From assembly GCF_006345805.1 (NCBI RefSeq), contig NW_021827347.1, positions 1 to 10,677 of the forward strand: a stretch of DNA of 10,677 bases, in the 5' to 3' direction. The notes under the pieces were generated by a model. It was not told the origin of the DNA. It ran no database searches and was given only the letters and a program-made list of their open reading frames with translations. The translations under genes and the position numbers were made by a program. Source of the stretch: Octopus sinensis (taxonomy: Eukaryota). Positions 1 to 10,677 of this stretch are shown piece after piece; the stretch's first letter is position 1; each line of letters begins with the position of its first letter.

Positions 1-445
1 TCTACTGACCCCGAAAACACACACGCTTGCAATGCGACCTTCTTAACCAAACCACACACAGCAACACAACAACTATTGAAGAGTATAAAAAAAAAGAATC
101 TATAGACTTGTTGTCACAACACCATAGAATCAAAATATCAGCTCACCGAAGTGTACGCATTAATTAGTCGGAGAGAAACAATAAACAAGATACGAAGACG
201 TATTCAATAGGAAAAATTTTAAAAAAGAAAAAGAAACGGAGATATATTAACGTTAGGGATGTGTGTTTGTTGTTGTGTGTTTGTTGTTGTGTGTTTGTGC
301 GTTTTGTTTATTTGATCAGAGTTTCTGCTTAAGTAGTTATTCCTTAGTGCGGTGATACTGTTGCCATATTTACAGAAGTTTGTTAAGCAGAGTGGAATTG
401 ATGAGAAACAGGAAGTGACATCGGAAGAAAGTGAAACGGAAGTGA

Positions 446-483
446 TTACATACATATATATATACATATATATATACATATAC

Positions 484-514
<31 letters not shown>

Positions 515-634
515 CATGTATATATATATATATATAAATATATATATACATATATATATATACATATATATATACATATACATATATATAAATATATATA
601 TGTATATATATATGTATATATATATATACAAACA

Positions 635-668
<34 letters not shown>

Positions 669-763
669 CATACATATATATATATTTATATATATGTATA
701 TATATATTTATATATACATATATATATATATACATATACATATTATATATATATATATACACC

Positions 764-794
<31 letters not shown>

Positions 795-808
795 CATATA
801 TATATTAT
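446..808. repeat. Imperfect (TA)n / (TACA) microsatellite array
   Basis: Direct reading; source of the YI-repeat ORFs. Confidence 0.97.
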
Positions 809-839
809 GTATACAGCAAATGAATTTCATCGTTGTTTA

Positions 840-920: not shown

Positions 921-1361
921 TGAAAAGAATACACGCGTTTTTTGCTGCATATGCATATTTTCGACTGAATGAGTAGTTATGCAGGTTTTGTGCACCGAGC
1001 ATAGCAATATTCACACATGCATATATATATGTGTGTCTGTATGACTGTGCTTGAATATATAAGTATGCACATATATTTATTTACTAATTTGTGTATTTTT
1101 CCCTCACGGGCTACTTTTTACTGGTAGGCAATACTTTGTATTGCATTACTGATATTTTGAAACTTCTTCACCGTTTCTCGTACTGTTAGCGTTCCGTATT
1201 TCAGTCGAGTGTGTTAGTATTAATGTGGTAACATAGTAGATTTCGTCTTGGTATATGTTTGGCTGAAGAAGGTAAGCAAAATATGAGTGAGAGACATATC
1301 TTGCAAAACCTGAAACCTGCAGGTACCACATTATCCATTTTCCGGGTGTTTCATCTTTCAG

Positions 1362-1700: not shown

Positions 1701-1741
<41 letters not shown>

Positions 1742-1742
1742 G
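1527..1742. repeat. Compound microsatellite (TA)n-(GATA)n-(GACA)n-(GATA)n
   Basis: Direct reading; lies immediately 5' of the LINE fragment. Confidence 0.97.
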
Positions 1743-1954
1743 AGAGACCTGCATGGGGTGGATGCAGTTGTCTTTAAAATAAAACTGGATCTCTTCCTGT
1801 CAGGTGTCCCAGATGAACCAACTTCACGGCAGGAGGTGCAGATGAGGGCAGCTGCATCGAACTCTCTCATGCACCAAATGGCAATTGCTAAAAAGCATTA
1901 GTGAAGTAAAATCATGTAGAAACACCAAATGTCGGTGCCCCAGCATGGCCACAG
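1743..1954 (+). mobile_element. 5'-truncated non-LTR retrotransposon (LINE) 3' end: ORF2 C-terminus + 3' UTR
   Basis: 1743-1901 reads RDLHGVDAVVFKIKLDLFLSGVPDEPTSRQEVQMRAAASNSLMHQMAIAKKH*. The FKxKLDxFLxxVPDEP...SNSL pattern is recalled from invertebrate LINE ORF2 ends; clade not assigned. The UTR ends in cggtgccccagcatggccacag, shared with the SINEs. Confidence 0.72.
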
Positions 1955-2686: not shown

Positions 2687-3120
2687 CGCAGGAGTGGGTG
2701 TGTGGTAAGTAGCTTGCTTACCGACCACATGGTTCTGGGTTCAGTCCCACTGCGTGGCACCTTGGGCAAGGGTCTTCTACTATAGCCTCTGGCCGACCAA
2801 AGCCTTCTGAGTGGATTTTGGTAGAAAATGATAGAAGTACGTCGTATATATATGTATATATATATGTGTGTGTGTGTGCGTGTGTGTGTGGTGTGTGCGT
2901 GTGTTTGTGTGTCTGTGTTTGTCCCCCTAACATTGCTTGACAACCGATGCTAGTGTGTTTACGTCCCCGTCACTTAGCGGTTCGGCAAAAGAGACCGATA
3001 GAATAAGTACTGGGCTTACGAAGAATAAATTCCGGGGTCGAGTTGCTCGATTAAAAGCGGTGCTCCAGCATGGCCGCAGTCAAATGACTGAAACAAGTAA
3101 AAGAGTAAAGAGTAAAAGAG
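2685..3120 (+). mobile_element. Full-length tRNA-derived SINE (Octopus-type) with internal (TA)/(TG) microsatellite
   Basis: Pol III A-box-like TGGGTGTGTGG at 2695-2705, B-box-like GGTTCAGTCCC at 2738-2748, 3' hairpin cagtc-aaat-gactg at 3077-3090, (gtaaaaga)n tail at ~3097-3120; (TA)n on both sides. Confidence 0.88.
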
Positions 3121-3699: not shown

Positions 3700-3915
3700 T
3701 CACATACACAAACACACACACACACACACACACGCACATAAACATATGCATAAATGAAAATACCCATGCGACCACATAATATAAAGTACAAAAATGTGTG
3801 GGGCAAATACACTTACATACAAACACATATTTATATGTATGTGAATATATATACACATATGTACAGATATATATGTGTATATATAAAAAACCCACCATAT
3901 ATAAAAAGATATATT

Positions 3916-3951
<36 letters not shown>

Positions 3952-4048
3952 AATAGATAACATATTCAAACCCCCATATATATATATAATATATATATAA
4001 CTGTTCTCGCGTTGTTGGTTTTTCTTGCTTGTTCATGTTTGGATTGAC

Positions 4049-4085
<37 letters not shown>

Positions 4086-4232
4086 TTATACAAGTATTTA
4101 TGCATATACATAAGTGTTATAGGTATATATATTTGAATATATATGTCTGTATATAAATGTATATATTATATATATATACATATATATATATATATTATAC
4201 ATATATATATAAATATATGTGTATGCATATAT

Positions 4233-4266
<34 letters not shown>

Positions 4267-4624
4267 TATATAATATATATTATATATTATAATATATATA
4301 TACATGTATGTGTCTATGTAATCTATGAAGTATTCAGTAGGTACTTCTAACGCTCAAAAGAGACATACCTCCGCAAAGCTACCGCATATCAATATGGAAT
4401 TTATCATATACATATATTCAATACACACGCCTGCTCCTCTCCCACGCACGCACATATGCTCGCACCCTCCCACACACACACCCACAGCACCAGCCCACGC
4501 ACACACGCACACAATCACATACAGATACTCACAAATACTGACATACATATCCATATACATATATGCATATATATATATGTATATATGTATGTATATATGT
4601 ATATATATATATATATATATATAC
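3700..4624. repeat. Interrupted (TA)n/(CA)n/(TG)n microsatellite field, ending in the left target (TA)n of the PLE
   Basis: Direct reading; includes short unique spacers such as ~4320-4400. Confidence 0.9.
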
Positions 4625-4654
4625 GCGAGAAAGAAGCAACAAGAATGGATAGGT

Positions 4655-4744
4655 TTTTAGTACAATCGTTTCATACAAGGACAGGCTTTATTAAAAGTTG
4701 TAAAAATTACAGCATATAACGTGTCCCGTACTCATCAGCTAAAA
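4655..4744 (-). ncRNA. Type I hammerhead ribozyme (3' pLTR copy)
   Basis: Minus strand: UUUUAG-CUGAUGA-GUACGGGAC...GUCCUUGUAU-GAAAC-GAUU-GUA/CUAAAA. Stem I UUUUAG:CUAAAA, conserved core, GUA cleavage triplet; predicted cut between 4661 and 4660. Confidence 0.88.
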
Positions 4745-4889
4745 TACATGTGTGTTCTCTAGACATCCTAGTGGTTGAGGCTATACTCATGAAGTAATGT
4801 ATAATTAAGTAACATAAACAGATTTCCAAAGTTCATTAAAGTTCTTTAAAGATGATGTACAGTCCTATCACAGAATTTTAAAAAAGTTC

Positions 4890-5173
4890 TATTAGCATCA
4901 CAGAGAAGGTGACCTAATCCATAGAGCACATATGAATTTCCAGAGATATGATGAGGGATTACATACTCACAGAAGACAAATTTATCCATTGTTAATCACA
5001 ACGAGGTGGTCTCAATTCCTGCTTATTAGCATTACAGAGAGGGTGAATTAATCCTTTGTATAGATGCACAATTTCCAATGGTGTAGATGTAAGTTTCCGG
5101 AGAAATGAAGAGGAATTTCATATTCACAGGCGATAAATTTATCAATGGTTGAACACAATGAGGTAGGTATCAA
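4890..5173. repeat. Diverged internal tandem duplication within the pLTR (units ~4890-5015 and ~5024-5173; also at ~9478-9762)
   Basis: tattagcatcacagagaaggtgacctaatcc vs tattagcattacagagagggtgaattaatcc, and tttccagagatatgatgaggg...gaggtggtctcaa vs tttccggagaaatgaagagga...gaggtaggtatcaa. The second unit has a ~20-bp insertion. Confidence 0.85.
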
Positions 5174-5278
5174 AACTTGTTATATGATTAGGTATTTGCT
5201 ACATTAATCACATTACTGCTATTTACAAGAGGCTGTAGCTATTTAACTTTTAAAGGCTGAAGGGCATTCTAGAGAGGC

Positions 5279-5460
5279 CAAGAATAGAAAGGAGGGAAGG
5301 GAATAGAGAAAAGAGAGAAAATAAAGGAGGAGGGATCAAAAAAAGGGGGGGGGAAAGGGGACTAAAAGAGAAGAGAAAAGGAAAAAGAATAAGAAGAAGA
5401 ACAGAAAAAAGAGAAAAGAGAAAGAAATGGGAAAGAAGGGAAAAAATAAAAATAAAAAGA
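5279..5460. repeat. Purine-rich low-complexity tract (polypyrimidine on the element sense strand); second copy ~9868-10037
   Basis: Almost only A/G on the plus strand, including a G9 run. Confidence 0.85.
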
Positions 5461-6197
5461 GGGTTCTAGTTATACAGACGAATTAGTAGACGGCAAGTCT
5501 GGTTTTAATTTACAGGCATCTAGGAACTAGAGGAGAATATTATTCTTTGGCCAGTAAAACAGCTAATTTATTGCTGTTGAAATCAGCTATGAATTTAAAG
5601 AGAATCTAAAGAGATAACACAGTCAGGGGGTTAGGGGTCAGATGCTAAAATCAAAAGAAAATACATTAGGAAAATCTAAGTATAATCTTATCAAAAAGTC
5701 AATAAAACTTACTTATTTAATTTATTCATTTTATTGTCTTAAGGAGTTGCCGTTATTATTCATACATTGACGGACTACAGGTCAAATCTTAGAAGATCAT
5801 TTACAAGGTGTTAGGGGATTGTCTATCATAATGAAGATAATCATATTATCACCGAGGGGTAGCCTTATTTATTTAATTTTGAAATAGAATTATGGGGCTA
5901 TAGTATCTCATTTTATTTTATTAGAGTTATGCTACTTAAATTAGATTAAGTTAGGAATTAAAATTAAAATTACAATTAAGATTTAAAATTAAGAATTTAA
6001 AAATTATGAGTTTGAAATTAAATAAAGCCTCAATTAAGCAGCGTATAAGTACTATTCACTTCCCTGTTCTCAAAAAACTGATGCAGATATAAGGAAAAAG
6101 ATAACTGTAGTGTGAGAACTCTTAGTTATCTACTTAAAGCAGTGCTATACTAGTAGAAATCAAGTTATATCTATCTATCTAGTTACGGATATTCTAA

Positions 6198-6621
6198 TCA
6201 TTTAAAATATTTTAAAGTCTTCAATTTAGCGTGGACACAAACTTGACCTAGTTCGATATGATTATTCAATAAGTTTACTATGTTTTCTATGCTTTAGAAT
6301 TTCATACGTCTCCATGGAGCATAGTTGGCAACCAACCCTACTATTTTTATACGGAATTGCTCTCCTAACTATTTCCCAATTAAGTTTATAATTTTTATTA
6401 TTATTTTTGAGTTCCCAGATTTTGTTTGAAAGTGGTGTGGTACCAGCTTTATGACGTAATTTAAAAGACGAGATGTGATTCCTAACTCTGGCTAGAAAAT
6501 TAATTGTACATCCAACGTAAAGATATTGTTTATTCTCCGTGGATATGGTACATTTATAGATTACATTATTTTCCCCACATAGACCAGGTGCCGGGCATTT
6601 TGATTTTATTCTACACTTACA
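6198..6621 (-). other. Cys-rich linker + GIY-YIG endonuclease domain
   Basis: CKCRIKSKCPAPGLC (CxCx5Cx5C, first Cys codon 6621-6619), then VIYKC...YLYVGCT (GIY/YIG equivalents), FLARVRNH (conserved Arg), CQLCSME (conserved Glu), and the repaired LLN...EL...CVH tail. Confidence 0.88.
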
Positions 6622-7724
6622 CACAGGAGGAGCAACTTCAGGCTTTGGATTATTCTTGGGTAGATGTCTTAGGTTCCTATTATTTTGATTATCATTTCTA
6701 TAGTTGGTGCTTATATCTAAAGTATTTCTATTATTTATTGATCCTTCAGCTTCATCATTTAGGTTTAAAGTCCTACCATGATTTCTTATATTATTGGTAA
6801 TGTTACTATTATTGTTAGTCTTTTTATCCGACTGCATATTGCTGTTATAAATATCACTGATTTTTTCATTCTCCTTATTTTCTCCATTAGCCTTATATCT
6901 ATTATTTCTATTATTAACATTATTACTTCTATTAATATCGGCATTGTTATTATTACTATTAATGTTAATGTTATTAGTCATTCTGTGGTTACTAATTTCA
7001 CCTATGTTTTGATAGTTACTATTGTTGTTTTTATTGTTGGTAGTATTATTATAATTGCTATTGGTATTCATGCTGATATTATTATTTTTATTTCTATCTT
7101 TCCTGGCTAGTTTAATGTTTTTATTATTAATCTTAGCTATTAAAGTGGACATATTTGGGAGGGTTGAATAAGAAATCCTAACTGTTTTCCTAGATATAAT
7201 TCTATGATATCTATGAGAGATAGGGAAATTTTTTTCCAGAATTACTTTAAATTTGTTCTGTATATCCGATTGTATCGCACAGTTGAAAGGGATATTCAGC
7301 CATAATATATCTTTTTTATTAAATTTAGGTTTCGTAGAATTACTACTATTCATCTCACCGGAGTTATTGTATTTATTACCATTATTTTTATTTTTATTTG
7401 TGTGCATCTTAGGTTTATCTACTTCAATATTATCCGAGTTACCTATGTTCTGGTCAATGCTTCTATTTGAATTGTTGGGCCTGTACGCTAGATTAGCGTT
7501 TACCATTAATTTAATTCTACTTTTATTTCGGGCTTGGTCTGTATTGCTGCTTATGTGATTACTGATAACTTCATTATTAGGAATACGTGAGTTCCCCTTA
7601 TCAACGAATGTAATCTTTTGGTTGTATCCAGCCTTAGTTAACGCCTCATTATAATGCTCAGAATGGGAGTTAAATATATCCTTATTGGATGATAATTTTG
7701 AAATTCTTAATGAAATATTTCTTA

Positions 7725-8557
7725 CTAAGATTCTATTATATTTGGGGGATGATTTGATAATTTATTTACGTAATTCGTGATTTCGCCTTCCTTTCTAAAT
7801 GGGTAATGTAGCTTGGAGTTAAGGTCTAGCGTAATATCTAGGAAGTTAACTATTTTAGTGCCCGGTTCATACGTTATACCGAGGTTGAAATCCTTAAAGA
7901 ACTTATTAATTTTCTTTCTAATCCTTTCTATAACAGATTTATTATTACTAGGGATAACAAACAGAGCATCATCCCTATATAGACCCCCCTGTATTTCTGG
8001 TATATCCTTGCTTATGCATTTTAATAGATATGCGCCCACTAGGTTGGTTACCTCAGCCGAATCACTGGAACCCATTGGTATATCAAAAAAATTAGGTGTA
8101 TCTGCTCTAGTCCATAATTTATCTTCAAATTCTATAAATGTCTTCCTAGCTAGTAGCACAATATTGATTTCTTCTCTAGATATGAGGGAGCGATTCATGG
8201 CAAATATTAGTGATTTGTTGAGTAAGATAGGGGAAATACTTGAGTAATAACTATTAATATCGAACTGAATAAAGGACAGACTACTAGTATTAGTTAGAGA
8301 GTTAAACCATTTTAGAACTTCATCCGTACTTAGCCATAGGTTTAAGGGAGAAGAGGGGTTATTTGGGGTAGAACACTATCCAGGATAGATTTACTAAGTC
8401 GGCCAATGTCCGACTTAGTTGGACAGATCAGCCTTACCGAAGGGTTTTCCAAGAAGTTCTTTTTGTGGTCTTTAAGGTTGATCCTGGGCTCACACGGTTT
8501 AAGTGGCTCCGTTCTATCCGTTAAATTTAGTTTCTCCATGATCTCTTTCATTTCCAT
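7725..8557 (-). other. Reverse transcriptase core domain (PLE type)
   Basis: Motif A FDINSYYSSI (Asp codon 8261-8259), motif B' FDIPMGSSDSAEV (~8090-8050), catalytic YRDD (7979-7968), and the VNFLDITLDL primer-grip region downstream. Confidence 0.92.
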
Positions 8558-9209
8558 GTTTACTTTTTCAAGTTGTTCTTAGTCGTAATTTTATATTTGG
8601 AGTTTAGTTCCTTCCTAATTAATTTGCTATAAATATCGTAATCAACTCTATACATATTACCCGTTTTATCTGCTGGTACTAGGATTCCATGTTTGCACCG
8701 GGTTGACTGAATAAAGTTCCTAAGGTGTCTAAGGTGAGGGTTATATCTTAACGGGTGTTCCTTGAAGCTAATATCATCTATAAGATTCAGCAAGTCTTTC
8801 TCAAATTCTCCAGGAATGGGTTCTGAGGTGGGCTTTTTCTACTTTTAAAAATTCTTCTAAAATTCTTTTCGGTGTTCTTTCCTGTGGTTTCTTCTTCTGT
8901 TTGACATCAAAATGGTACGTTTTCCACCTGATTCTTCTAATGAAATCGTTAATCCTATGAATGAGAAGCCAATTATATTCATCTATACTATGTAAGGGGA
9001 TGTCTTTAGGGGAGAACTCAATGTTTACCTTTTCCATTCTTGTTGAGAATTAAGTACCAGAAAAAATACAGACTGTATGGGAATATATTCAAAAAGCAAT
9101 AAAGATTCAAGTTAATTTAAATGAATTTACTTGAATATGGTACCTAACTTAGATGCACCAAAAAAAAACTATACTGTTTTAACAATACAGTAATGTGGGG
9201 TGATTATAA

Positions 9210-10037
9210 GCGAGAAAGAAGCAACAAGAATGGATAGGTTTTTAGTACAATCGTTTCATACAAGGACAGGCTTTATTAAAAGTTGTAAAAATTACAGCAT
9301 ATAAACGTGTCCCGTACTCATCAGCTAAAATACATGTGAGTTCTCTAGACATCCTAGTGGTTGAGGCTATACTCATGAAGTAATGTAGATAATTAAGTAA
9401 CATAAACAGATTTCCAAAGTTCATTAAAGTTCTTTAAAGATGATGTACAGTCCTATCACAGAATTTTAAAAAAGTTCTATTAGCATCACAGAGAAGGTGA
9501 CCTAATCCATAGAGCACATATGAATTTCCAGAGATATGATGAGGGATTACATACTCACAGAAGACAAATTTATCCATTGTTAATCACAACGAGGTGGGTC
9601 TCAATTCCTGCTTATTAGCATTACAGAGAGGGTGAATTAATCCTTTGTATAGATGCACAATTTCCAATGGTGTAGATGTAAGTTTCCGGAGAAATGAAGA
9701 GGAATTTCATATTCACAGGCGATAAATTTATCAATGGTTGAACACAATGAGGTAGGTATCAAAACTTGTTATATGATTAGGTATTTGCTACATTAATCAC
9801 ATTACTGCTATTACAAGAGGCTGTAGCTATTTAACTTTTAAAGGCTGAAGGGCATTCTAGAGAGGCCAAGAATAGAAAGGGAAGGTAGAAGAAAAGAAAG
9901 AAAATAAAGGAGGAGGGATCAAAAAAAGGGGGGGAAAGGGGACTAAAAGAGAAAGAAAAGGAAAAAGAGAATAAGAAAGAACAGAAAAAAGAGAAAAGAG
10001 AAAGAAATGGGAAAGAAGGAAAAAATAAAAATAAAAA
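9210..10037 (-). repeat. 5' pseudo-LTR of the PLE (direct repeat 2; 3' part of an upstream tandem unit)
   Basis: Starts gcgagaaagaagcaacaagaatgg as at 4625 and runs colinear with 4625-5458 to the A-rich end at ~10037. Confidence 0.95.
9240..9330 (-). ncRNA. Type I hammerhead ribozyme (5' pLTR copy)
   Basis: Same fold as 4655-4744: CUGAUGA at 9324-9318, GAAA at 9257-9254, GUA at 9248-9246; predicted cut between 9246 and 9245. Confidence 0.88.
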
Positions 10038-10306
10038 AACTACTAGGATGTCTGAGAACTCACATGTATTTTAGCTGATGAGTACGGGACACGTTTTATT
10101 GCTGTAATTTTTACAACTTTTAATAAAGCCTGTCCTTGTATGAAACGATTGTACTAAAACCTATCCATTCTTGTTGCTTCTTTCTCGCTATAATCACCCC
10201 ACATTATGTATTGTTAAAACAGTATATTTTTTTTTTTGGTGCATCTAAGTTAGGTACCATATTCAAGTAAATTCATTAAATTAACTTGAATCTTTATTGC
10301 TTTTTG
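10038..10306 (+). repeat. Inverted terminal segment, reverse complement of 9090-9362
   Basis: aactactaggatgtct...tctttattgctttttg is the reverse complement of caaaaagcaataaaga...agacatcctagtggtt. It spans the pLTR/leader junction and carries the right-pLTR allele at the one diagnostic substitution. Confidence 0.95.
10069..10159 (+). ncRNA. Type I hammerhead ribozyme (inverted copy, plus strand)
   Basis: ttttag 10069-10074, CTGATGA 10075-10081, stem II gtacgggac/gtccttgtat, GAAA 10142-10145, GTA 10151-10153, ctaaaa 10154-10159. Confidence 0.88.
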
Positions 10307-10310
10307 TATA

Positions 10311-10361
<51 letters not shown>

Positions 10362-10465
10362 GTATATGTATATATATATGTATATATACATATATATATC
10401 ACATACAAACTTACATATATATATAATATATATATGTAATATATATATATGCATATATACAGGTG

Positions 10466-10501
<36 letters not shown>

Positions 10502-10570
10502 CACATATATACATATATACATATGTTATATGAATATGAAACATGTTCATAATATATATATATGTTATAT
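10307..10570. repeat. Imperfect (TA)n array, right target flank of the PLE
   Basis: Direct reading. Confidence 0.95.
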
Positions 10571-10572
10571 TT

Positions 10573-10677
10573 GCGAGCTGGCAGACACGTTAGCGCGCCG
10601 GGTGAAATGCCTAGCGGTATTTCGTCTGTCGTTACGTTCTGAGTTCAAATTCCGCCGAGGTCAACTTTGCCGTTCAT
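10573..10677 (+). mobile_element. 5' part of a second tRNA-derived SINE family, cut by the window edge
   Basis: gcgagctggcagacacgttagc (A-box-like), gagttcaaattccgccgaggtc (B-box-like, ~10642-10652), then gaggtcaactttgcc; recalled as an abundant octopus SINE. Confidence 0.75.

What the first reader, a model, noticed from the sequence alone, without database searches (positions are those of the whole stretch)
4625..10306. Ribozyme-processed Penelope-like retroelement: hammerheads 4585 nt apart define a unit-length, possibly circular, RNA
Seen: complete hammerhead folds in both direct pLTRs (predicted cuts 9246/9245 and 4661/4660) would release a 4585-nt RNA holding the whole ORF. All three genomic copies run intact across the cut site, and the insertion ends 36 nt past the second cut. 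Established: PLE pLTRs often carry type I hammerheads (Cervera and de la Pena), and hammerhead retrozymes make circular RNAs. Inference: those 36 nt are the 5' end of a cleaved monomer, so finding them at the 3' end of the insertion requires an uncleaved multimer or a religated circular template. Rolling reverse transcription around a circle would give the observed ~1.2-unit tandem. The association is known; this family and its geometry may be undescribed.
Basis: partly seen in the sequence, partly recalled or inferred. Interest (0 to 1): 0.85.

Follow-up and report, generated by a model that had tools for sequence, protein, structure and literature searches.

The report
Octopus Penelope-like retrotransposon with hammerhead ribozymes
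This is an ordinary, well-preserved insertion of a Penelope-like retrotransposon (Hydra clade) in an octopus genome; its hammerhead ribozymes, partial tandem and short 3' "tail" are standard published features of this element class and do not show that it copies itself from a circular RNA.

Summary
On the minus strand, 10306->4625 is one composite insertion in a (TA)n microsatellite. It consists of a 257-nt inverted arm, an 836-nt 5'-truncated partial unit and a full 4585-nt unit. All three hammerhead (HHR) copies have an intact core. The cuts would fall at 9246/9245 and 4661/4660, and the insertion ends 36-41 nt past the second cut.

The HHR is probably real. It is below the Rfam threshold because helix II carries a 53-nt insertion, but five octopus relatives show compensatory changes and a self-complementary helix III typical of dimeric PLE hammerheads.

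The broken ORF (RT plus C-terminal GIY-YIG) carries the Hydra-clade motifs RWK, DKT and CxCx5C.

Partial tandem, inverted arm, 30-40-bp tail and (TA)n target are the published PLE architecture. The circle/rolling-RT idea was published in 2014. Biochemistry on a Poseidon element (2024) attributes the tail to internal RT initiation on unprocessed RNA.

New here: eight independent copy ends fall at two fixed sites, +36-41 and about +160 after the cut. In this family's unit each site is followed by a UA-rich patch that can pair with the (TA)n target.

Verdict: new member of a known kind, low interest.

The parts
4625..10306 (-). Whole composite PLE insertion, about 1.18 direct units plus an inverted arm, lying between (TA)n runs
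10050..10306 (+). Inverted 5'-truncated arm. It equals unit positions 9346->9085, that is the HHR region plus 160 nt past the cut. Its outer end at 10306 is 'site B'.
   Evidence: Alignments. About 9 differences in 257 nt against the direct copy.
9210..10045 (-). 5'-truncated partial unit (the upstream pLTR), equal to 5458->4625
   Evidence: Between 5292->4625 and 9880->9210 there are 1 substitution and 4 indel events in 668 nt.
4625..9209 (-). Full 4585-nt unit: 5'UTR, ORF, 1.6-kb 3'UTR, HHR and tail
4655..4744 (-). Hammerhead, 3' copy. Helix I 4744-4739 with 4660-4655. CUGAUGA at 4738-4732. Helix II domain of about 60 nt. GAAA, then C-GAUU-G, then UA. Cut at 4661/4660.
   Evidence: Rfam RF00163, 18.5 bits, full-length model. 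Pattern match. Covariation.
9240..9330 (-). Hammerhead, 5' copy. CUGAUGA at 9324-9318. Cut at 9246/9245.
10069..10159 (+). Hammerhead, inverted copy. CUGAUGA at 10075-10081. Cut would be at 10153/10154.
4625..4660 (-). The 'tail': 36 nt (41 with the shared TATA) between the cut and the 3' end of the insertion. This is recurrent end 'site A'.
   Evidence: The same end is seen in L001, L002 (twice) and L004, and at about +45 in L003.
9085..9209 (-). 5'UTR stretch between site A and site B in the full unit. It carries UA-rich patches at +38 (TATA) and +158 (ATATAT).
6200..9037 (-). Single ORF, broken. The frame changes near 8838-8804, 8578-8563, 8375-8345, 7761-7728 and about 6268. An Asn-rich low-complexity stretch lies at about 7560-6700.
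   Evidence: The comparison copy, L004 ORF 6255-8684, is intact over 809 aa.
7728..8375 (-). Reverse transcriptase palm and thumb piece (FDIPMGS, YRDD, FLDITLD)
   Evidence: Pfam RVT_1 E=0.003, below cutoff. 242 homologues. AlphaFold model pLDDT 82, with Foldseek hits to retron RTs, TERT and group II intron RTs.
6268..6678 (-). CxCx5C linker (CKCRIKSKC) plus GIY-YIG endonuclease (VIY...YVG...R...CQLC..E)
   Evidence: Pfam GIY-YIG E=0.0012, below cutoff. Homologue P0121 from O. sinensis, 71% identity.
5293..5458 (-). CT-rich low-complexity block of the 3'UTR. The 5' truncation point of the upstream partial unit lies at its start.
4551..4624 (.). (TA)n-rich target flank on the left; no target-site duplication can be read
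10307..10420 (.). (TA)n-rich target flank on the right

Best explanation
The feature is one insertion of an endonuclease-containing Penelope-like retrotransposon of the Hydra clade, in an octopus genome, inside a (TA)n microsatellite. Shown: the element's anatomy, the hammerhead, the clade motifs, and the recurrence of the two end sites. Inferred: both outer ends are cDNA start points. The GIY-YIG endonuclease nicked both strands of the (TA)n target. The RT then primed from each nick at an internal site of the element RNA downstream of the hammerhead. One site is +36-41 (site A, left end, 4625). The other is about +160 (site B, right end, 10306). At each of these sites a UA-rich patch of the RNA (UUAUAAU, AAUAUAUU) can pair with the TA-repeat primer. 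One cDNA ran 5.4 kb, through a whole unit and 836 nt into the preceding one. The other stopped after 257 nt. The two were joined head to head at about 10046-10049. The template was therefore an RNA longer than one unit whose 3'-most hammerhead was not cut. Most likely it was a linear read-through transcript of a tandem or pLTR-bearing parent copy. The hammerhead is a dimer-type PLE ribozyme with a 2-bp helix III inside a self-complementary octamer. It may process multimeric transcripts with help from the element protein, but the RNAs that get copied are those that remain uncleaved at that site.
For: Anatomy. Hammerhead: the core is intact in all three copies; Rfam gives a full-length but sub-threshold match; the motif is 400-fold above chance. 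With relatives from O. sinensis and O. bimaculoides, 88.5% of cells pair against 34-56% in slid controls. Six pairs change on both sides, and 0 of 500 shuffles reach the covariation score. The helix III octamer stays self-complementary through a change from ACAAUUGU to ACGUACGU. Clade: RWK, DKT, CxCx5C, no CxxC after GIY, CxxC..E..CxH, and a (TA)n target match the Hydra diagnosis. Host: best hits are Octopus sinensis and O. bimaculoides proteins at 76-85% identity, and flank repeats are 92-95% identical to O. sinensis loci. Ends: six independent ends lie at +36-45 (window, L001, L002 twice, L004, L003) and two at about +160 (window inverted arm, L004), all running into TA-type repeats; none lies at the cut. 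Sites A and B sit on two of the five alternating-TA runs in the first 260 nt, including the only 6-mer. A random position does so with chance 5% or 0.3%. Literature: internal initiation, cleavage and extension of both strands, dispensable HHR cleavage and unprocessed RNA as substrate in Poseidon; standard tandem, inverted-arm and tail architecture.
Against: Nothing in a genomic copy tells a linear uncleaved multimer from a resealed circle; both give a seamless junction. The biochemistry cited is from a different clade (Poseidon). There the RT start site was reported as not homologous to the target, whereas here microhomology is proposed. Only eight ends from five loci were examined. The two start sites here are about 120 nt apart, not 30-40 as in Poseidon. 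The inverted arm is about four times more diverged than the direct pLTR pair, which the single-event model does not explain.
Confidence: 0.55

Rival explanations
1. Both hammerheads cleave a multimeric transcript, the 4585-nt monomer is ligated into a circle, and the RT primes at +36-41 and runs around the circle more than once, giving the 1.18-unit tandem.
For: The junction across the cut is seamless in all three copies. Dimer-type hammerheads suit double cleavage of a two-HHR transcript. Small HHR retrozymes in animals do form circles (PMC7229834). A 504-bp HHR unit in O. sinensis (L002 1242-3026) shows the same tandem-plus-inverted-arm architecture. The model was proposed for PLEs in 2014.
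Against: The geometry does not require it. [quoted passage not shown] Naiad PLEs build the same tandems and tails without canonical hammerheads. No RNA data exist for this element. The monomer HHR fold is disfavoured.
Confidence: 0.15
2. Template jumping. The RT starts at +36-41 near the 5' end of a cleaved monomer, reaches the 5'-OH end at +1, and jumps to the 3' end of the same or another cleaved monomer. Helix I may hold the two ends together. This rebuilds a seamless HHR junction without ligation.
For: A seamless junction is expected because the cleaved ends are contiguous in the unit. End-to-end template jumping is a known property of related non-LTR and group II RTs (own knowledge; the GsI-IIC template-switching complex appears among the fold hits).
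Against: Jumps usually leave extra or missing nucleotides, and none is seen at 9246/9245, 4661/4660 or 10153/10154. Site B, at +160, would need the same mechanism.
Confidence: 0.12
3. Two events. An older 5'-truncated copy ending at site A was hit again by a new full-length copy, because the PLE endonuclease recognises its own tail region. The tandem would then not be the product of one cDNA.
For: The PLE endonuclease cuts its own tail/pLTR region. The (TA)n-like patch at the junction is a preferred target.
Against: It needs the second copy to start exactly at +37/+42 with no filler. The pLTR pair differs by only one substitution in 668 nt. The stretch TTATAATCACCCC that follows site A at the window's internal junction also continues past site A in L004's 3' HHR copy, so it is element sequence, not target.
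Confidence: 0.08
4. The hammerhead motif is a relic or a parasite of the pLTR with no role in this element's cycle. The conserved block is really an RT-binding or initiation signal.
For: Activity of metazoan PLE min-HHRs in vitro is low. Craig et al. raise the possibility that HHRs simply parasitise PLEs. The block from -136 to +41 is the only non-coding part that aligns between families.
Against: Compensatory changes keep helices I and II and the palindromic helix III. The core is invariant in seven of the nine copies; L001 has a GGAA core and L002b an A at the first helix III pair.
Confidence: 0.1

Closest known systems
Hydra-clade Penelope-like elements (Craig, Yushenova, Rodriguez, Arkhipova 2021, PMC8557442)
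   Same: C-terminal GIY-YIG. RWK instead of GxKF/Y. DKT instead of DKG. CxCx5C linker. No CCHH. CxxC and CxH around the conserved E and N. A very divergent RT (Pfam barely detects it). Insertion in (TA)n. Hammerhead present. Aquatic invertebrate host; Mollusca are listed among the hosts.
   Different: The unit is 4.6 kb against 'generally <3 kb', owing to an Asn-rich low-complexity insert in the ORF and a 1.6-kb 3'UTR. The hammerhead has a helix II domain of about 60 nt. No phylogeny was run here.
Poseidon PAc of Anolis carolinensis (Frangieh et al. 2024, PMC11167929)
   Same: Tandem or pLTR organisation. A hammerhead just upstream of the RT start sites. Two discrete internal initiation sites that define the genomic tail. 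AT-rich target. Both DNA strands cut and extended, which fits the inverted arm.
   Different: In PAc the HHR overlaps the start codon and the two sites are 30-40 nt apart. Here the cut is 209 nt upstream of the ATG and the sites are about 120 nt apart. PAc start sites were reported as not homologous to the target. Here both sit on UA patches that match the (TA)n target.
Minimal dimeric type I hammerheads of metazoan PLEs (Cervera and de la Pena 2014, PMC4209133)
   Same: Located in both pLTRs. Short helix III capped by a palindromic loop. Longer than usual helix II (7 bp proximal stem). Short helix I (4-6 bp). Inverted HHR pairs 100-700 bp apart are also described.
   Different: Helix II is extended by a conserved rod and hairpin of about 45 nt (UGUAA-UUU-UUACA, with covariation). 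This is why Rfam, and probably the standard descriptors, miss it.
Animal non-LTR retrozymes (Cervera and de la Pena 2020, PMC7229834; Li et al. 2026 preprint)
   Same: Type I hammerhead, tandem copies, and probably the same PLE machinery. A 504-bp example lies in O. sinensis locus L002.
   Different: Retrozymes are small (170-400 nt RNAs), non-coding, and shown to form circles. This element is a 4.6-kb autonomous-type unit with no RNA evidence.

Membership tests
Penelope-like element, EN+ | Reverse transcriptase domain | tested here: met
   YRDD and flanking motifs. RVT_1 E=0.003, below cutoff. Model pLDDT 82 with Foldseek hits to retron RT (6.5e-6), TERT (7.7e-5) and group II intron RT. A specific affinity to TERT was not resolved.
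Penelope-like element, EN+ | GIY-YIG endonuclease in the same ORF | tested here: met
   C-terminal VIY...YVG...R...E. Pfam GIY-YIG E=0.0012, 19.6 bits against cutoff 22.6. Contiguous with the RT in the intact L004 ORF.
Penelope-like element, EN+ | Partial tandem forming pLTRs, often with an adjacent inverted 5'-truncated copy | tested here: met
   Description.
Penelope-like element, EN+ | 30-40-bp tail at an end of the insertion | tested here: met
   36-41 nt after the cut at 4625-4660, recurring in five related copies.
Penelope-like element, EN+ | Hammerhead motif in the pLTR | tested here: met
Hydra clade of PLEs | RWK motif, DKT in place of DKG, CxCx5C linker | tested here: met
   RRIRWKTY, PADKTGN and CKCRIKSKC read in the translations. 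Criteria.
Hydra clade of PLEs | CCHH motif of the EN absent; CxxC and CxH around the conserved E and N | tested here: met
   No CxxC after VIY. CQLC..ME.. is present, and CIH/CVH follows (L004 ORF; in the window only after a further frameshift near 6268). This was read by eye, without a reference alignment.
Hydra clade of PLEs | Short element (<3 kb) | tested here: not met
   The unit is 4585 nt. The paper says 'generally', so this is not disqualifying.
Hydra clade of PLEs | Placement inside the clade in an RT/EN phylogeny | not tested
   No reference Hydra sequences were at hand. The supplement is not held.
Hammerhead ribozyme type I (Rfam RF00163) | Conserved core: C3-A9, G12-A14, A15.1-U16.1, H17 | tested here: met
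   CUGAUGA, GAAA and GUA are present in all three window copies.
Hammerhead ribozyme type I (Rfam RF00163) | Score at or above Rfam's gathering threshold | tested here: not met
   18.5 bits against 34. No hit at E<=1 in the whole window.
Hammerhead ribozyme type I (Rfam RF00163) | Helices I-III supported by covariation | tested here: met
   6 of 22 pairs show changes on both sides; palindromic helix III is preserved. The sample is small, about five independent lineages.
Hammerhead ribozyme type I (Rfam RF00163) | Self-cleavage | not testable with these tools
   Needs in vitro transcription of monomer and dimer constructs, with and without the ORF protein.
Retrozyme / circular-RNA retroelement | Small non-coding unit between hammerheads | tested here: not met
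   The 4585-nt unit carries an RT-EN ORF.
Retrozyme / circular-RNA retroelement | Unit-length circular RNA in vivo | not testable with these tools
   No RNA data are available.

The most novel reading that the evidence does not exclude
An autonomous 4.6-kb Penelope-like element really does replicate through a hammerhead-excised, religated circular RNA. The RT would start at fixed UA patches and run round the circle to make the pLTR tandem. The octopus family, with its two sharply defined start sites and a co-resident 504-bp retrozyme of identical architecture, would be the system in which to show it.
Probability: 0.12. Interest if true: 0.7.

Novelty: new member of a known kind. Interest (0 to 1): 0.25.

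Why it matters
The element class, its hammerheads, its tandem, inverted-arm and tail architecture, and the circular-RNA hypothesis are all in the literature, so the finding itself is ordinary. Three modest points are worth keeping. First, it places a Hydra-clade PLE family in octopuses, with an intact relative in O. sinensis. Second, its hammerhead carries a conserved, long helix II extension that makes it invisible to Rfam at genome scale. Third, eight independent copy ends fall on just two sites after the ribozyme cut, and in this family's unit each is followed by a UA patch complementary to the (TA)n target. The third point suggests microhomology-guided internal priming. It differs from what was reported for Poseidon and is easy to test.

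Tried and rejected
- Rfam over the whole window and over four related loci gave only microsatellite-driven miRNA false positives (mir-297, mir-1277, mir-3149 and others) and no hammerhead.
- Rfam on the L002 504-bp HHR array found nothing.
- Looking up the window's own 414-aa ORF in public assemblies found no record, so the exact source genome stays unidentified.
- The protein search with the N-terminal 78 aa found nothing. The search with the EN piece found only one hit.
- Pfam on the intact 809-aa L004 ORF gave no family at E<=0.01. A profile search of PDB sequences gave only a weak retron RT hit. The RT call therefore rests on motifs and on the fold search.
- The supplement of Craig et al. 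is not held, so no reference Hydra sequences could be aligned.
- TRF missed the 504-bp array because its longest period is 500.
- Unconstrained folding does not give the hammerhead fold for any copy, as expected for dimer-type or protein-assisted PLE hammerheads.
- I considered using pLTR identity to tell a circle from a linear multimer. I rejected this because near-identity is compatible with both.
- I considered that the ORF frameshifts prove an old dead copy. I rejected this as unsafe. The pLTR pair differs by one substitution but four 1-2-nt indels, mostly in short homopolymer runs, so long-read assembly errors are a live alternative.

Full report
OBSERVATION. The element lies on the minus strand. 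The repeat finder shows 4620-5458 repeated at 9205-10045 with offsets of 4585-4589 nt. Reading the minus strand gives, in order:
- a (TA)n flank;
- 10306->10050, a fragment in inverted orientation;
- 10045->9210, a 5'-truncated partial unit;
- 9209->4625, a full unit;
- a (TA)n flank.
Each of the three copies contains CUGAUGA, a domain of about 60 nt, then GAAAC-GAUU-GUA. The cuts after GUA fall at 9246/9245, 4661/4660 and, on the plus strand, 10153/10154. The cut-to-cut distance is 4585 nt and it encloses the whole ORF. The insertion ends 36 nt after the second cut, at 4625. The next five bases (G, then TATA) match the unit at four positions, so the end is 36-41 nt. Its 'three copies' are two direct copies and one inverted copy.

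IS THE HAMMERHEAD REAL? Rfam finds no hammerhead at E<=1 in the whole window; the table is filled with microsatellite artefacts. When only 221 nt are searched, Hammerhead_1 (RF00163) matches over its full length at 18.5 bits (gathering score 34, E=0.051), with a 53-nt insertion in helix II. A core pattern (CTGANGA, 40-70 nt, GAAAC, 2-8 nt, GTH) has 4 matches against 0.01 expected. Three of them are this repeat.

Related copies were fetched from Octopus sinensis and O. bimaculoides (L001-L004). They are 68-82% identical and give nine sequences. On the hammerhead structure, 88.5% of cells pair, against 34-56% when partners are slid. Six of 22 pairs change on both sides, and no shuffle reaches the covariation score. 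For example, pair 10.1-11.1 is G-U, A-U or G-C, and pair 26-77 is G-U, G-C, U-A or A-U. The distal part of helix II is a conserved hairpin (UGUAA-UUU-UUACA) with its own compensatory change.

Helix III is only 2 bp, but the octamer from A15.1 to U16.1 is self-complementary. It is ACGAUUGU in the window (two G-U pairs), ACAAUUGU in three relatives and ACGUACGU in O. bimaculoides. This is the signature of the dimer-type hammerheads of metazoan PLEs. As a monomer the hammerhead fold is about 6 kcal/mol worse than the minimum-free-energy fold. The motif is therefore very probably a genuine ribozyme of the low-activity, dimer-type or protein-assisted kind. Cleavage itself cannot be tested here.

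WHAT THE ELEMENT IS. The ORF (9037->about 6200) is split over five frame pieces. It reads:
- an N-terminal piece with RRIRWKTY;
- PADKTGN;
- an RT with FDIPMGS, YRDD and FLDITLD;
- a long Asn-rich low-complexity stretch;
- CKCRIKSKC;
- a GIY-YIG domain (VIY...YVG...R...CQLC..E).
Pfam sees RVT_1 and GIY-YIG only below its cutoffs. An AlphaFold model of the RT piece (pLDDT 82) matches retron RTs, telomerase RT and group II intron RTs. The best protein hits are Octopus sinensis and O. bimaculoides predictions at 76-85% identity, then many marine metagenome and cnidarian sequences at about 40%. Interspersed repeats in the flanks are 92-95% identical to O. sinensis loci. The window is therefore from an octopus.

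RWK, DKT, CxCx5C, absence of the CCHH arrangement, CxxC and CxH near the C terminus, a (TA)n target and a hammerhead are exactly the diagnosis of the Hydra clade of C-terminal-EN PLEs, which is reported from Mollusca among other phyla. The one departure is size: 4.6 kb against 'generally <3 kb'.

The closest fetched relative is L004, 79% identical over 2.9 kb. It has an intact 809-aa reading frame that includes the Asn-rich stretch.

The two direct pLTRs differ by one substitution and four small indels in 668 nt. This indel excess, together with frameshifts that sit in short homopolymer runs, means the breaks in the ORF may be assembly errors rather than decay.

COPY ENDS. Six independent 3' ends fall at the same place, 36-45 nt after the cut, and run into TA-type repeats. 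They are the window at 4625, L001, L002 twice, L004 and O. bimaculoides L003. Two further ends fall about 155-160 nt after the cut: the outer end of the window's inverted arm (10306) and the 3' copy in L004. No end lies at the cut.

In the unit, site A is followed by TTATAAT and site B by AATATATT. These are two of the five alternating-TA runs in the first 260 nt, and the second is the only 6-mer. A random position has a 5% or 0.3% chance of such a neighbour. The outer ends of a 504-bp hammerhead-bearing tandem in L002 also sit on TA-rich patches of its unit.

COMPARISON WITH WHAT IS KNOWN.
- Craig et al. 2021 describe PLE insertions as partial tandems forming pLTRs, often with an inverted 5'-truncated copy at the 5' side, a 30-40-bp tail at one end, hammerheads in the pLTRs, and a (TA)n bias in clades that have the linker motif.
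- Cervera and de la Pena 2014 found the hammerheads in both pLTRs, noted inverted pairs 100-700 bp apart, and proposed in their Discussion that cleaved PLE RNA may be ligated into circles. These circles would serve as templates for more-than-unit reverse transcription, which would explain the head-to-tail tandems.
- Frangieh et al. 2024 reconstituted a Poseidon element. The protein cuts and extends both DNA strands. Reverse transcription starts at two sites internal to the RNA, and the sequence between them is the genomic tail. [quoted passage not shown]
- Naiad PLEs make the same tandems and tails without canonical hammerheads.

MECHANISM. But 'uncleaved multimer or circle' is not a discovery of this window. 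It is the open alternative already in the literature, and the existing biochemistry leans to the uncleaved linear RNA.

My best account, at confidence 0.55, is two-sided target-primed reverse transcription at a (TA)n site. Each nicked TA 3' end would pair with an internal UA patch of an RNA longer than one unit, at +38 on one side and +158 on the other. The two cDNAs (5.4 kb and 257 nt) would then be joined head to head near 10046-10049. The anatomy and the recurrence of the two sites are shown. The pairing step, the linear nature of the template and the single-event origin are inferred.

Rivals are:
- the circle (0.15);
- end-to-end template jumping across cleaved monomers (0.12);
- re-insertion into an older copy's tail (0.08);
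- a hammerhead with no role in the element's cycle (0.10).
One observation fits none of these well. The inverted arm differs from the direct copy at about 9 positions in 257 nt, roughly four times the divergence of the direct pLTR pair.

VERDICT. This is a new member of a known kind: a Hydra-clade PLE family in octopus whose hammerhead has an unusually long helix II. The geometry is the published one and cannot decide between linear and circular templates. Interest is low (0.25). The circular-template reading remains possible (about 0.12) and would be of real interest if shown, but that needs RNA experiments, not more sequence reading.

Noticed in passing
window 1263-1325 (+): A second, unrelated hammerhead-like motif: CUGAAGA, then a helix II AGGU/ACCU, then GAAAC-CUGCAG-GUA. 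Its helix III region is a perfect 10-nt palindrome (ACCUGCAGGU). An 'ATCCATT' stretch downstream resembles the tail. Helix I is weak (3 bp plus), and there is no Rfam hit. It is probably the remnant of another PLE or retrozyme.
   Followed up: partly
L002 1242-3026 (O. sinensis VCDQ01005361.1): A 504-bp non-coding unit with a type I hammerhead-like core (CUGAUGA-UGGCUG...CAGCC-GAAAC-UAAUUA-GUA; no Rfam hit). It occurs as about 2.6 tandem copies plus a 453-nt inverted arm, between (TA)n runs. This is a retrozyme-like element with the same tandem-plus-inverted-arm architecture as the autonomous PLE. Its outer ends lie on TA-rich patches of the unit.
   Followed up: partly
window 10050-10306 versus 9346-9085: The inverted arm differs from the direct copy at about 9 positions in 257 nt, mostly 1-nt deletions. 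The two direct pLTRs differ at 5 positions in 668 nt. The cause is unexplained. It could be lower fidelity of the second cDNA, a different template RNA, homogenisation of the direct pair, or assembly error.
   Followed up: partly
window 4625-5292 versus 9210-9880, and the ORF 9037-6200: Differences between the pLTRs are dominated by 1-2-nt indels in short homopolymer runs (4 indels against 1 substitution). The ORF frameshifts also sit at such runs. This suggests long-read assembly errors, so the copy may be younger and more intact than it looks.
   Followed up: no
window about 6700-7560 (-): An Asn-rich low-complexity stretch of roughly 280 codons lies between the RT/thumb region and the endonuclease. 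The intact ORF of the O. sinensis relative (L004) also has it, so it is tolerated. It accounts for part of the unusual length for a Hydra-clade element.
   Followed up: partly
window 1741-1954; 2084-2272 and 2690-3115; 10573-10677: Short interspersed repeats are shared with O. sinensis and O. bimaculoides loci. 1741-1954 is 92-95% identical to L001 and L002. 2084-2272 and 2690-3115 are 85-88% identical to L001; within them, 2091-2234 and 2894-3037 are 89% alike. They are probably SINE-like elements, and no tRNA was detected in the window.
   Followed up: partly
window 440-830, 1520-1750, 3780-4320, 4550-4620, 10307-10520: Dense TA, TG and GATA microsatellites give dozens of sub-threshold Rfam 'miRNA' matches (mir-297, mir-1277, mir-3149, mir-466). 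These are artefacts of simple repeats.
   Followed up: yes
L005 12029-12132 (+) and L003 6909-6832 (-): Other octopus PLE hammerheads also have very long helix II domains (about 60-85 nt) and palindromic helix III loops (AGCU, GUAC). The long helix II therefore seems to be a lineage feature, and genome-wide HHR counts in cephalopods made with standard descriptors are likely to be underestimates.
   Followed up: no
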